Assembly (NCBI RefSeq): GCF_031769215.1
Contig: NW_026782472.1
Location: 62,001-126,000, forward strand
Direction of reading: 5' to 3'
From: Ylistrum balloti
Lineage: Eukaryota
Length of the DNA: 64,000 nt
Shown: positions 8,924-34,856 of the stretch, piece after piece
Layout: each line of letters starts with the position of its first letter
Numbering within the stretch: position 1 is the stretch's first letter
Notes under the pieces: model-generated
The model's input: the letters and a program-made list of their open reading frames with translations, nothing else
The model's database searches: none
Told to the model about the DNA's origin: nothing
Made by a program: the position numbers and the translations under genes

Positions 8924-10855
8924 TCACAAATGGGCAAACATTGCCACTCTGTCCATTCCTCCAACTAAAAGGCGCCCACTACTATGATAAGACAAAGCAA
9001 CCGGATGAACTATTGACGGACTCAGTGACCAGCTGCGGATATATTCTCCAGTTTTAGAAAACACTTGTATCTCGCTGTTATGATAGTGTGTGACTAATAC
9101 AGATTTGTTATCAGTGCAGTGTACCCCTGGGTGTACACATCTCCTGTTTGTCTCACGCGACAGTAGACAGCGACGGACTACTTTACCCGTAATCTTATCG
9201 AGAAAGATTAACGCCCCTCGTTTCCAATCCGACACGATATGACAATCCTCATTACTAGATATAGTAAAAATACGAACTTCTTCATCATTAGTGCCGACTT
9301 CGCTGATTTTGTTTCCTTTTGTGTCGTATACTGTCAGACGGGATTTAGCGTATGGCGTGGCTACTAGGAAGCGACTATGACATGTATTTGTCACACGAGG
9401 GGTCCCTTCATGTTGGATCTTTATTTTTGAGAGTAGCCTTTTCTCCTTGTAAAAATAAATATGATTTTGAGCGGAGCATAAAATGATACCGTCGATACAC
9501 GCTACATTTAATGGCGATGATATCGGTATACTCCAGAGCATTTGTCCTTTGGTGTCGAAAATTGAGAATTTATCGTTCCATTTATCGCTGACAACGAATG
9601 ACTCACTAGAAACCCAAGCTACATCCCTCACATTTGGAGGCCGGAAATCTGAACACGTCCTCACTGAAAACACATGTACGACTTTGTACGTATTAAATGC
9701 AGGAGATAATTCCGTTCCTTTGCATGTTGTCTCCTTCTTGAAGGCTGTTTGACTTGCTACCTCTTCCCCGTTTATTTCTTTATTTATATGTAATAACATC
9801 GGAATACGTAATCTGATATGAAAGTCATAGTCCAACAGTTTTTCTAGCTCTTCATAATGAGTGATCGGTTCCCATCGCAGACGTGGTACGTCGATTTCTT
9901 TTAAAAACGTCATTTTTTGCATAAGCAAATCTTCAAGCGAAATAGTATTTATATCCGTTGGTTTTGATAAGAGCTTACAACATAATGTCATTGCAGGGTT
10001 GAATTCACTTACGTATTTTGCTGCCTCACATTGGTATATCAAAAGTGTTTTCTTTGATTTTGAAAACTGTGCTGTCATTTTGCGTTTGTCATCTTCTGCT
10101 GTTTTTGTCACTAACATTTTAACTGCACGACATTTATCAAGAACTGTCTGCTGTAATTCATTTTCTGTTCTCTCGATTTCTGCGATTCCTTCATGAATGT
10201 GATGTTGTAAATATAACGCTGCATTTCGGCGACTTTTTACATCGTCCAATAATTCATGGACACGGGAGATTCTGGTGGCCACTGATGGGCTGTTCATTGT
10301 AATAATGTCATGTGTACTATGACTAAGTAAACAATCCTCACAGGTTGTAAGAGAGCATGAATTACAAAAGTAGTGTAGGGATATATCCGTATGAACACTA
10401 CAGTACCTTGAAAGCCTTTCACAAATATCGTTGTCATATTGCCCATCTCGGACATCGGTCAATGTGACCACGTGATGGTTACGTGTCAGTCTAGTAAAGG
10501 TATGCCGTTTGGAACACTTGTCACACAACATATCACTGCATTGCACACAGTAATGAGTTGCCATTTCTGTTGTACCTTTGTAGGAACATACGATACAATT
10601 GTTGTGCTGAATTTTCATATTGTGTAGCTTTACGAGGTACTTCAAGTATGTGTTTGTTCTAAGTTCAGAAACTGCACGTTCTTCCAAACCATTACATATT
10701 TTACACACGTACATTTGCGATAAACCTGTTTTTGGATTTTCCCTTTCTAAACAGTCGTAGCAGAATGTGTGTAGACAGGACAGTATCTTCGGGTTTTTAA
10801 GCACGTCATTACAAATAGAACAAACCAGTTCACTGTCGACGCTTTCGGAATCCAT
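8924..10855 (-). CDS. TRIM-A: RING/B-box1/B-box2/coiled-coil/NHL-like beta-propeller protein (TRIM2/3/56/71-like architecture), ~643 aa, single coding exon
   Basis: C3HC4 RING CSIC..PKILSCLHTFCYDC..CKIC. B-box1 CIVC..HYCVQCSDMLCDKC..H..H. B-box2 CSVH..YFCNSC..CEDC..H..H. Helical region, then propeller repeats (VAWV..FVVSD, HIVSDW, YHSSGRLLV). Likely start is the ATG at 10855, just downstream of the acceptor tatgacag; the ORF-track start at 10900 is a non-ATG codon upstream of that acceptor. Confidence 0.92.
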   Translation of the reverse strand: MDSESVDSELVCSICNDVLKNPKILSCLHTFCYDCLERENPKTGLSQMYVCKICNGLEERAVSELRTNTYLKYLVKLHNMKIQHNNCIVCSYKGTTEMATHYCVQCSDMLCDKCSKRHTFTRLTRNHHVVTLTDVRDGQYDNDICERLSRYCSVHTDISLHYFCNSCSLTTCEDCLLSHSTHDIITMNSPSVATRISRVHELLDDVKSRRNAALYLQHHIHEGIAEIERTENELQQTVLDKCRAVKMLVTKTAEDDKRKMTAQFSKSKKTLLIYQCEAAKYVSEFNPAMTLCCKLLSKPTDINTISLEDLLMQKMTFLKEIDVPRLRWEPITHYEELEKLLDYDFHIRLRIPMLLHINKEINGEEVASQTAFKKETTCKGTELSPAFNTYKVVHVFSVRTCSDFRPPNVRDVAWVSSESFVVSDKWNDKFSIFDTKGQMLWSIPISSPLNVACIDGIILCSAQNHIYFYKEKRLLSKIKIQHEGTPRVTNTCHSRFLVATPYAKSRLTVYDTKGNKISEVGTNDEEVRIFTISSNEDCHIVSDWKRGALIFLDKITGKVVRRCLLSRETNRRCVHPGVHCTDNKSVLVTHYHNSEIQVFSKTGEYIRSWSLSPSIVHPVALSYHSSGRLLVGGMDRVAMFAHL

Positions 10856-32864: not shown

Positions 32865-34856
32865 ATGGCGGAGTTGTCGTTAACAATCGAAGAAGAATTT
32901 CTTACCTGTAAGATTTGCCTAGAGTTCTACGTTGATCCAAAGGTTCTTCCTTGCTTACATACCTTTTGTCTCAGCTGTATAAGCAGTCACTTTGACAAAA
33001 CACGGAAAGGATGCAAGGCATTATGTCCTCTTTGCAGGGCGACGTTTGAAGTACCGGGCTGCCAACCGGCAAATATTAAATCTAACTTTTACATAAACAG
33101 TTTATCTGAAGTTATTAACACGAAAAAGAAAAGCACAAAGAGCTGCACATTTTGTGAAATGAAGAACGTGATATCCGCTTGTAGGTGGATATGCATTACG
33201 TGTATGGACTATCTATGTGAAGCATGTAAACAAAATCATCAGGGTACACGAGTAACTTTTGACCATCAAACTATATCGATTGAGCAGCTTATGAGTGGTG
33301 TTTATGATCAAGTGATCCGCAAAAAAACTGATATTCCTTGCCTCGATCATGACAATGAAAAAGTCAGATTCTTTTGTGAGACATGTTCACAACTAGTTTG
33401 CCTTGATTGCGTCTTGTTAAAACACAGGGACCATACATATCGTTCACCTGCTGATGCAATGAAGATTAGACGTACAGATATGGAACAAAAAATAAGTAAA
33501 GCACAGGCTCAAATGAAGATATATGAGGAAAATAAGAACTTCATTACCGATTTACTGTCAGAAATAGATAAATCGGAAATTAGCCAAATTGCGTCTTTGA
33601 AAACATTTTGTAAAACCCTGAAAGACGCTATTGATCAGAAAATGAACGAGACTGAGAAAACGGTTCGAGTGATATCTGAAGAGTCGAGGAGAAGTCTTGG
33701 AGAACGCAAAACACTTATCGATGAAGATATCCAAACACTTAAGGAACCATTAGAACTTTGCAAAGATCTCTTAGAAAATGGGCGAGATGAGGAGATTCTG
33801 TACTTTCGTGAAAGCTTTGAAGATCGTCTACAAACCCCGATCACACATGCTAACTTGCGGAGAGATCTACACTGGACAAAGGTTGAAGTGTCTATGTCAG
33901 AAACAATAGAACAGCTGATAAAGGAAAAGTCGGTGCAAAGCACATTGGAGCAAGAAGTCTTCACTGAGAACAGAATTCCTTGTATGGAAATGACAGCATC
34001 TGAAATTGGCGGTAACGAAGATTCACCAAGGAGTCTTCTCGTCACCGAGCATCCGTCAGCTCCGAATTTTCACTCTCTGACGCAACCTTATGTCAACGGA
34101 GGGAAATATCGTCTGATAAAGACATTTAACTGTTACATTGGATACGGAAGCGAATTCGTCCCGGAGCCAACTGGTGTGGCATGGATTACCAGTCAGCGAA
34201 TTGCTGTGTGTGACGCGGAGAACAAACAGCTAAAGGTGTTTACTAGAAATGGGGAAACCGATTGGTTCATAGATATCAAAGTAACACCAATTGGTTTATC
34301 TGTGGTGGAAGGCAAAATTGCGATAGCAGTGTCTGACGGCGTGTTGATCTATCAAAACGACACGAGAGTTGGACTGATCAAATGCAAGGCCGATGCATTC
34401 CGTTACATTGCATCCACTTCCTTAGAAATACTCCTGTTTGGGACGGACGGGGACGAGGTCAGAAGATATGATAGCAAGGGAAAGCGCCAAGGAACAATTC
34501 GGCTAGAAGCAGCCTTACAACCAATGGCAGTGTCTTGTAACGATAGAATATTAGTCGTATCAGACAAACGAAGATCTGAAGCTGTGATATTTAATTACGA
34601 GGGTAAAAAAATGAGGAGTGTTCAACGGAACCAAACCAGCTGGTTGGCCGATGCGCATTGTCTACAGAATGATAGGGTGCTCATGGTAAACAAACAATCC
34701 AGCAAGGTAGTGATCCTCCAAGATGGCGCCAAATACCTTGGAGGATGGTCAACGGAGCCGGAAATAACAAAACCCTGCTGCATTGACTACCATTCAGACG
34801 GTTTCTTGGTTATCGGAGGAGCCGGTGGTAATATTGCAGTGTATCAATTTATCTGA
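32865..34856 (+). CDS. TRIM-D: paralog of TRIM-B, ~663 aa, single coding exon
   Basis: RING CKIC..PKVLPCLHTFCLSC..CPLCR. Shares KSNFYINSL, GRDEEILYF and the end C.DYH.DG.LVIGG with TRIM-B. Acceptor ttttttccag precedes 32848 and the ATG is at 32865; the ORF-track start at 32826 is intronic. Confidence 0.93.
   Translation: MAELSLTIEEEFLTCKICLEFYVDPKVLPCLHTFCLSCISSHFDKTRKGCKALCPLCRATFEVPGCQPANIKSNFYINSLSEVINTKKKSTKSCTFCEMKNVISACRWICITCMDYLCEACKQNHQGTRVTFDHQTISIEQLMSGVYDQVIRKKTDIPCLDHDNEKVRFFCETCSQLVCLDCVLLKHRDHTYRSPADAMKIRRTDMEQKISKAQAQMKIYEENKNFITDLLSEIDKSEISQIASLKTFCKTLKDAIDQKMNETEKTVRVISEESRRSLGERKTLIDEDIQTLKEPLELCKDLLENGRDEEILYFRESFEDRLQTPITHANLRRDLHWTKVEVSMSETIEQLIKEKSVQSTLEQEVFTENRIPCMEMTASEIGGNEDSPRSLLVTEHPSAPNFHSLTQPYVNGGKYRLIKTFNCYIGYGSEFVPEPTGVAWITSQRIAVCDAENKQLKVFTRNGETDWFIDIKVTPIGLSVVEGKIAIAVSDGVLIYQNDTRVGLIKCKADAFRYIASTSLEILLFGTDGDEVRRYDSKGKRQGTIRLEAALQPMAVSCNDRILVVSDKRRSEAVIFNYEGKKMRSVQRNQTSWLADAHCLQNDRVLMVNKQSSKVVILQDGAKYLGGWSTEPEITKPCCIDYHSDGFLVIGGAGGNIAVYQFI

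What the first reader, a model, noticed from the sequence alone, without database searches (positions are those of the whole stretch)
8924..34856. A head-to-head pair of two different TRIM types, duplicated as a unit: candidate paired TRIM module
Seen: four RING/B-box/coiled-coil/propeller genes arranged A(-)B(+)...C(-)D(+). A and C share diagnostic motifs (NTY..LV.LH, TFTRLT.NH, EDLL..K, SPLNVAC, HI.SDW). B and D share others (KSNFYINSL, GRDEEILYF, DYH.DG.LVIGG). A-type and B-type differ far more from each other. So the divergent A-type/B-type couple was copied together and stayed coupled while each copy diverged strongly. Established: TRIMs dimerise through their coiled coils, and head-to-head heterologous pairs are how plant sensor/executor NLRs (RRS1/RPS4, RGA4/RGA5, Pik-1/Pik-2) are organised. 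Inference: this may be a co-expressed, hetero-oligomeric TRIM module, possibly immune, with the propellers as variable recognition surfaces. I do not know of such pairing being described for invertebrate TRIMs.
Basis: partly seen in the sequence, partly recalled or inferred. Interest (0 to 1): 0.88.

Follow-up and report, generated by a model that had tools for sequence, protein, structure and literature searches.

The report
Duplicated head-to-head TRIM-NHL gene pair
Four scallop ubiquitin-ligase genes of the TRIM-NHL kind sit as two head-to-head couples made by copying one couple; one couple is kept in a second scallop, but nothing yet shows the partners work together.

Summary
The window is from the saucer scallop Ylistrum balloti. 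It carries four single-exon RING/B-box/coiled-coil/NHL-propeller genes in the order A(-) B(+) C(-) D(+). A and C are 33-38% identical and B and D 36%, against 22-24% across types. Both types are 100/100 clades and probably sisters (85/89).

The simplest history is an inverted duplication that made a divergent couple, then a tandem copy of that couple. Both events predate the split from Mizuhopecten yessoensis. That species keeps the C/D orthologues head-to-head (55% and 69% identity, 3.3 kb spacer), although the flanks sampled share nothing with the window.

The functional reading is not supported:
- An A-like gene in M. yessoensis stands alone.
- No B or A orthologue was found.
- A is not annotated.
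- C has a one-base frameshift in its RING.
- Partners have the same architecture, with no extra domain in either.
- Propellers are the most constrained parts (dN/dS 0.12-0.21), not variable surfaces.
- The spacers share no conserved DNA and no ISRE or NF-kB consensus.

Related ark-clam genes form same-strand arrays, and a pearl-oyster relative is single. Primate TRIM5/TRIM22 and TRIM34/TRIM5 are known precedents. My verdict is an ordinary lineage-specific expansion with one modestly interesting conserved couple.

The parts
8924..10855 (-). Gene A: intact single-exon TRIM-NHL ORF (643 aa from the ATG at 10855; stop codon at 8924-8926). A/C type. Not annotated in the public gene set.
   Evidence: ORF; RING plus B-boxes; AF2 mean pLDDT 83.5 with helix 190-297 and propeller 390-642; no gene with this product on record.
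10856..14769 (.). A-B divergent spacer of 3.9 kb. It contains a 48-bp tandem repeat at 13049-13259.
   Evidence: Coordinates; tandem repeat; no similarity to the C-D spacers and no ISRE or NF-kB consensus.
14770..16878 (+). Gene B: intact TRIM-NHL ORF of 702 aa, B/D type. Public model XP_060079301 is named 'protein PML-like'.
   Evidence: 36% identical to D over the full length.
20603..23520 (.). Transposon-like insert between the two couples: 47-nt terminal inverted repeats around two ORFs (21440-22384 and 22819-23313) that have no Pfam family.
   Evidence: Inverted repeat I3; ORFs; no Pfam hits; raised GC.
28731..30902 (-). Gene C, main ORF: 723 aa from an internal ATG. It holds the second half of the RING, two B-boxes, a coiled coil, a long low-complexity linker and the propeller. 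A/C type.
   Evidence: 55% identical to the M. yessoensis orthologue; dN/dS 0.28-0.35.
30903..31014 (-). Gene C, original 5' end: start codon at 31014-31012 and the first RING half. It is out of frame with the main ORF because of one extra A in the A6 run at 30964-30969, giving a premature TAA at 30957-30955.
   Evidence: Translations and DNA; alignment with three relatives shows a one-base insertion only in this copy; the M. yessoensis orthologue has an intact RING.
31015..32864 (.). C-D divergent spacer of 1.85 kb.
   Evidence: Coordinates; no blastn similarity to the 3.3-kb M. yessoensis C-D spacer; no ISRE or NF-kB consensus.
32865..34856 (+). Gene D: intact TRIM-NHL ORF of 663 aa, B/D type.
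   Evidence: P0168; AF2 model; NHL fold matches; 69% identical to M. yessoensis 'TRIM56-like' P0007; dN/dS 0.18.

Best explanation
This is a small subfamily of intronless TRIM-NHL (TRIM56-like) E3 ubiquitin-ligase genes, so far seen only in two scallops. It grew by ordinary local duplication. An ancestral gene was duplicated in inverted orientation, which gave a divergent couple of paralogues (A/C type and B/D type). That couple was then copied in tandem as one segment before Ylistrum and Mizuhopecten diverged, which gave A(-)B(+)C(-)D(+).

By homology and by the models, each protein is a RING E3. It would dimerise through a coiled-coil helix of about 110 residues and bind its target, RNA or protein, with a six-bladed NHL propeller. 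A role in innate immunity is plausible by analogy with TRIM56 and with bivalve immune-gene expansions, but it is not shown.

The head-to-head layout is a trace of the duplication history, kept for C/D because the spacer is short and perhaps shares regulatory DNA. It is not evidence of an obligate two-protein module. Steps shown: domain content, fold, paralogy pattern, conservation of the C/D couple, purifying selection. Steps inferred: ligase activity, dimerisation, ligand class, regulation.
For: Architecture and fold.

Two types, each 100/100 and sisters at 85/89, with both duplications older than the species split.

C/D orthologues head-to-head in M. yessoensis.

Purifying selection at dS of about 1 (D 0.18, C 0.28-0.35), with the propellers most constrained.

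The layout is not general:
- The A-clade gene P0019 is unpaired within 10 kb on either side.
- No A or B orthologue lies next to the M. yessoensis couple or appears in the protein searches.
- Tegillarca relatives form a same-strand array.
- The Pinctada relative is single.

No partner-specific similarity or gene conversion.

Tandem duplication is the documented route of immune-gene expansion in bivalves (PMC4346834). Marin 2012 places TRIM56 with the NHL TRIMs in subfamily C (PMC3503706).
Against: The C/D couple is the only block shared between the 64-kb window and the 32 kb sampled in M. yessoensis (tblastx found nothing else). Its linkage may therefore be favoured by selection and not just inherited. 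Both members of that couple are under purifying selection, and the coiled-coil helices of the two types are almost the same length (108 and 111 residues), so a heterodimer is sterically possible. Only two species could be examined, and no expression or interaction data were available.
Confidence: 0.7

Rival explanations
1. Co-regulated couple without hetero-oligomers. The short divergent spacer holds shared regulatory DNA, so each couple is switched on together, but each protein works as its own homodimer on its own target.
For: Divergent orientation with 1.85-3.9 kb spacers. The C/D adjacency is kept in M. yessoensis while the sampled flanks differ. Primate TRIM5/TRIM22 are likewise divergent, with about 5 kb between their starts and a proposed shared core promoter (PMC3597737).
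Against: There is no conserved non-coding block between the two species' C-D spacers or between the A-B and C-D spacers, and no ISRE or NF-kB consensus. The start codons are 1.85-3.9 kb apart, wider than a classical bidirectional promoter, and the transcription starts are unknown. A has no public gene model whereas B has one.
Confidence: 0.18
2. One reading: a hetero-oligomeric, sensor/executor-like TRIM module. The partners would co-assemble through their coiled coils, and their different propellers would jointly recognise a pathogen-derived ligand.
For: Two couples with congruent history. One couple is conserved across species under purifying selection. Coiled coils are of equal length. TRIM paralogues can depend on one another, as in TRIM34 needing TRIM5alpha (PMC7179944).
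Against: - Partners have identical architecture, and neither carries an integrated extra domain.
- Partner coiled coils are only 16-22% identical, whereas the known co-acting pair TRIM34/TRIM5 shares 56%.
- Propellers are conserved, not diversifying.
- An A-clade gene persists alone, and B has no detectable orthologue in M. yessoensis.
- C's RING is intact in M. yessoensis, so a RING-less 'sensor' is not an ancestral feature.
Confidence: 0.08
3. The -+-+ order arose without a unit duplication, for example by separate duplications of each type followed by rearrangement. The couples would then be coincidental.
For: Transposon-like DNA and a large palindrome lie between the couples, so the region has been rearranged. 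Synonymous sites are saturated between paralogues, so equal age of the two duplications cannot be proved.
Against: This needs several events where one tandem segmental duplication suffices. Both duplications predate the same speciation and have similar protein path lengths. Per-domain identities for A-C and B-D are alike.
Confidence: 0.04

Closest known systems
TRIM-NHL proteins (Marin 2012 subfamily C: TRIM2, TRIM3, TRIM32, TRIM56, TRIM71, Brat, Mei-P26)
   Same: They share RING, B-box1, B-box2, a long coiled coil and a six-bladed NHL propeller. The family profile hits TRIM3 B-box/coiled coil at 8e-57, TRIM2/3 NHL at 1e-39 and TRIM56 RING at 7e-31. The D model's propeller superposes on the Brat, TRIM2, TRIM3 and TRIM71 NHL domains at TM 0.70-0.77.
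   Different: There is no filamin domain between coiled coil and propeller; a disordered linker of 40-170 residues takes its place. Pfam's NHL model scores only faintly. The genes are single-exon and the subfamily was found only in scallops.
Vertebrate TRIM56 (antiviral E3 ligase; the name that public annotation gives the M. yessoensis D orthologue)
   Same: The domain order is the same, without filamin. Vertebrate TRIM56 proteins are among the significant full-length matches.
   Different: In the tree, vertebrate TRIM56 forms its own clade, and its relation to the scallop clade is unresolved. Identity is about 21-27%. Orthology is therefore not shown, and function cannot be transferred.
Primate TRIM6/34/5/22 cluster (TRIM5 and TRIM22 divergent; TRIM34 acts through TRIM5alpha)
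   Same: Paralogous TRIM genes lie side by side, one pair is divergently oriented with only a few kb between the gene starts (PMC3597737), and there is documented functional dependence between neighbouring paralogues (PMC7179944).
   Different: Those genes are SPRY-type TRIMs with introns, and the co-acting pair is 56% identical. The divergent orientation there came from an inversion, not from a couple being copied as a unit. Here the partners are about 23% identical, and no interaction is known.
Head-to-head plant NLR pairs (RRS1/RPS4, RGA4/RGA5, Pik-1/Pik-2)
   Same: Both show divergent orientation of two members of one superfamily, with the couple duplicated or retained as a unit.
   Different: In the plant pairs one member carries an integrated decoy domain and the other executes. 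Here both partners have the same domains. The protein family and the chemistry are unrelated. The comparison with plant pairs rests on general knowledge and was not tested here.
Tandem expansions of innate-immune gene families in bivalves
   Same: Lineage-specific local duplication of immune-type genes is the rule in oysters (PMC4346834). Tegillarca relatives of these genes form a tandem array.
   Different: The arrays sampled elsewhere are same-strand or single. An inverted couple that was then copied as a couple was seen only in the two scallops.

Membership tests
TRIM/RBCC E3 ligases | N-terminal C3HC4 RING finger | tested here: met
   Pfam RING models pass their cut-offs in A, B and D. In C the RING is split by a one-base frameshift, so for that copy the feature is not met as the assembly stands.
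TRIM/RBCC E3 ligases | One or two B-boxes followed by a long coiled coil | tested here: met
   zf-B_box plus an ANCHR-like B-box in all four. Single helices span residues 195-305 in D and 190-297 in A in the AF2 models.
TRIM-NHL class (subfamily C) | C-terminal six-bladed NHL beta-propeller | tested here: met
   The propellers have about 24 strands at pLDDT above 90. The D model gives Foldseek matches to Brat, TRIM2, TRIM3, TRIM71, Thin and Mei-P26 NHL domains, TM 0.70-0.77. The profile hits TRIM2/3 NHL at 1e-39.
TRIM-NHL class (TRIM2/3/71 type) | Filamin/Ig domain between coiled coil and NHL | tested here: not met
   There is no filamin Pfam hit. The region is a low-confidence disordered linker in both models. 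TRIM56 and TRIM32 also lack this domain (general knowledge, not checked here).
TRIM56 orthologues | Groups with vertebrate TRIM56 to the exclusion of other TRIM-NHL genes | tested here: inconclusive
   Vertebrate TRIM56 rows form a separate 100/100 clade, and the deep branches joining it to the bivalve clades have weak support.
Paired sensor/executor immune genes (NLR-pair model) | Head-to-head orientation with a short shared upstream region | tested here: met
   The start codons are 3.9 kb (A-B) and 1.85 kb (C-D) apart on opposite strands, and 3.3 kb apart in M. yessoensis. Whether a promoter is shared could not be tested.
Paired sensor/executor immune genes (NLR-pair model) | Asymmetric architecture: one partner carries an integrated or decoy domain | tested here: not met
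   All four have the same RBCC-NHL layout. The only asymmetry is C's broken RING, which is intact in the M. yessoensis orthologue.
Paired sensor/executor immune genes (NLR-pair model) | The two types occur consistently as couples across loci and species | tested here: not met
   Three couples were seen: two in Y. balloti and one in M. yessoensis. However, the A-clade gene P0019 is unpaired within 10 kb on either side, and no B or A orthologue was found in M. yessoensis. Only two species could be sampled.
Paired sensor/executor immune genes (NLR-pair model) | Physical hetero-complex and genetic interdependence of the partners | not testable with these tools
   No multimer prediction, expression data or interaction data were available.

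The most novel reading that the evidence does not exclude
The C/D-type head-to-head couple is a conserved, co-regulated two-gene unit of scallops whose products form a mixed TRIM-NHL assembly with two different propellers. It would be an animal counterpart of paired immune receptors, and the A/B couple would be a decaying or diverging second copy.
Probability: 0.08. Interest if true: 0.7.

Novelty: new member of a known kind. Interest (0 to 1): 0.3.

Why it matters
If the couple were a true functional unit, it would be a first case of genomically paired TRIM ligases in an invertebrate. It would also offer a handle on how expanded TRIM repertoires in molluscs recognise targets.

As it stands, the locus is a clean worked example of how an inverted duplication followed by a segmental duplication builds a small TRIM-NHL subfamily. 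One couple has stayed adjacent across two scallop lineages at dS of about 1. It also flags two annotation issues: gene A is missing from the public gene set, and gene C is modelled without its RING.

Tried and rejected
- Word-indexed protein searches with A alone and with an alignment of four A/C-type proteins returned only distant hits. They did not even recover known family members, so they say nothing about distribution.
- I first took P0019 to be the A orthologue, because it is A's sister at 96/91 in the tree. I dropped that reading because synonymous sites between A and P0019 are saturated, whereas the C and D orthologue pairs have dS of about 1.0-1.1. It is more likely an old paralogue in the A subclade.
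- A search for conserved non-coding blocks in the spacers (blastn, word size 7) found nothing.
- Scans for ISRE, NF-kB and GAS motifs found nothing above the window background.
- The bacterial-type promoter scan does not apply to an animal genome, and I ignored it.
- A synteny test of the flanks by tblastx found nothing.
- Programmed frameshifting at C's A6 run is unlikely. Restoring the RING frame needs a +1 shift, and the run is only six bases.
- I screened 18 further representatives with high N-terminal identity to B. All belong to other bivalve TRIM clades.
- Earlier notes of this scan on the same genome held nothing relevant.
- Literature searches found no description of paired invertebrate TRIMs. 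The library is limited to open-access papers.
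Full report
**What is there**

The window matches, at 100% identity over 26 kb, contig JAUZWB010000064.1 of the Ylistrum balloti (saucer scallop) assembly GCA_031769215.1.
- A: 8924-10900 (-)
- B: 14770-16878 (+)
- C: 28731-30902 (-)
- D: 32826-34856 (+)

Pfam finds a RING and two B-boxes in A, B and D, and B-boxes only in the C ORF. 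No other TRIM pieces occur in the 64 kb.

**Fold and family**

AlphaFold models of D (mean pLDDT 81) and A (84) show the same layout:
- a RING and two B-boxes;
- a single helix of 111 residues in D and 108 in A;
- a disordered linker;
- a six-bladed propeller at pLDDT above 90.

The D model's propeller superposes on the NHL domains of Brat, TRIM2, TRIM3, TRIM71, Thin and Mei-P26 (TM 0.70-0.77). A family profile hits TRIM3 B-box/coiled coil (8e-57), TRIM2/3 NHL (1e-39) and TRIM56 RING (7e-31). These are therefore TRIM-NHL proteins of Marin's subfamily C, which includes TRIM56 (PMC3503706). They lack the filamin domain.

Public names are 'PML-like' for B and 'TRIM56-like' for the M. yessoensis D orthologue. 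Orthology to vertebrate TRIM56 is not resolved.

**Two types, and how they arose**

| Comparison | Identity | Bits |
|---|---|---|
| A-C | 33-38% | 363 (two HSPs summed) |
| B-D | 36%, full length | 478 |
| Cross-type | 22-24% | 162-194 |

In a maximum-likelihood tree with 25 other TRIM-NHL proteins, the B/D type and the A/C type are each 100/100, and they are sisters at 85/89. Outside its own type, each type's propeller is most similar to the other type's propeller.

The simplest history has two steps. An inverted duplication of one gene made a divergent couple. One tandem duplication of that couple then gave the -+-+ order with alternating types. Path lengths (A-C 1.91, B-D 1.67) and per-domain identities fit a single event. 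Synonymous sites are saturated, so equal age cannot be proved.

**A second species**

In Mizuhopecten yessoensis (scaffold NEDP02000532.1), a 771-aa gene lies head-to-head with P0007, with 3.3 kb between the starts. The 771-aa gene is 55% identical to C and has an intact RING. P0007 is 69% identical to D. Both group with C and D at 100% support, so the couple duplication predates the species split.

Nothing else is shared between the window and the 32 kb sampled there. No A-type or B-type gene lies within 10 kb beyond the C orthologue.

A third A/C-type gene, P0019 (LOC110452480), lies on another scaffold and has no TRIM within 10 kb on either side. It is A's sister in the tree (96/91). Its synonymous divergence from A is saturated, whereas the C and D orthologue pairs have dS of about 1.0-1.1, so it is probably an old paralogue.

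No B orthologue appeared in an exhaustive HMMER search of 1.8 billion representatives, or in the word-indexed search.

Relatives outside scallops are arranged differently. Tegillarca relatives form a same-strand array. A Pinctada relative is single.

**Selection**

| Gene pair | Overall dN/dS | Propeller | Coiled coil | Linker |
|---|---|---|---|---|
| D vs its M. yessoensis orthologue | 0.18 | 0.12-0.14 | 0.35-0.42 | 0.3-0.6 |
| C vs its M. yessoensis orthologue | 0.28-0.35 | 0.13-0.21 | 0.43 (one method) | 0.5-0.6 |

At the domain-average level the propellers are among the most constrained parts, not variable surfaces. Site-specific positive selection cannot be excluded with only two sequences.

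**Points against a functional couple**

- The partners have identical architecture.
- Partner coiled coils are 16-22% identical, and no region is more alike between partners than between non-partners.
- A has no public gene model.
- C has one extra A in an A6 run at 30964-30969, compared with three relatives. This puts the first RING half out of frame and gives a stop at 30957-30955. The remaining 723-codon ORF is still open. The frameshift is therefore very recent, an assembly error, or tolerated because a RING-less protein is used.
- The spacers share no conserved DNA, and none has an ISRE or NF-kB consensus.

**Points that keep the idea alive**

- The C/D adjacency survived while the sampled flanks changed.
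- Both C and D are constrained.
- The coiled coils of the two types have nearly equal length.
- Neighbouring TRIM paralogues can depend on each other, as TRIM34 does on TRIM5alpha (PMC7179944).
- Primate TRIM5/TRIM22 are divergent, with about 5 kb between their starts (PMC3597737).

**Verdict**

- Duplication of the couple as a unit is well supported.
- The couple is conserved for C/D only.
- The hetero-oligomeric immune module remains an untested speculation, with several indications against it.
- This is an ordinary lineage-specific TRIM-NHL expansion with one modestly interesting conserved couple.

The main limit is that only two scallop genomes could be reached with the tools.

Noticed in passing
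window 30955-31014 (-): Gene C's RING is interrupted by a one-base insertion in an A6 homopolymer. The public model starts at the internal ATG (30902) and so lacks the first RING half. This could be a homopolymer assembly error.
   Followed up: partly
window 8924-10855 (-): Gene A is an intact 643-aa TRIM-NHL ORF that folds confidently. No gene with this product is on record in the public collection, so it appears to be unannotated.
   Followed up: yes
window 20603-23520: A transposon-like element of 2.9 kb has 47-nt terminal inverted repeats (87% complementary). It carries two ORFs (314 and 164 aa) with no Pfam family, in a stretch of raised GC.
   Followed up: partly
window 25706-27080: A nested, nearly perfect palindrome: 507-nt arms at 100% complementarity and inner 115-nt arms at 99%, around a 140-nt centre. 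It is either a foldback element or a long-read assembly artefact.
   Followed up: no
window 35400-35798 and 36450-37089: Two minisatellite arrays lie just downstream of gene D: 90-bp units x 4.5 (94% matches) and 25-bp units x 26.
   Followed up: no
window 13049-13259: A 48-bp tandem repeat (4.4 copies) lies inside the A-B spacer.
   Followed up: no
window about 4782-7024 (+): A C-type lectin gene (Pfam Lectin_C, 227-aa product in the public annotation) lies just downstream of gene A's 3' end.
   Followed up: no
window 48790-49158 (+): An ORF fragment matches a DDE_3 transposase domain (1e-10). It is probably a decayed Tc1/mariner-like element.
   Followed up: no
window 51779-52849 (+): An ORF carries an IgGFc-binding domain (4e-25).
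   Followed up: no
L003:10001-11995 (M. yessoensis NEDP02003363.1): An A-clade TRIM-NHL gene (P0019, LOC110452480) stands alone. It has no TRIM within 10 kb on either side, and a tyrosine-phosphatase gene lies downstream.
   Followed up: yes
L005 (Tegillarca granosa JARBDR010000107.1): Four called TRIM genes of a sister clade are all on the same strand within 22 kb, and some are more than 90% identical. This is a recent same-orientation tandem array.
   Followed up: partly
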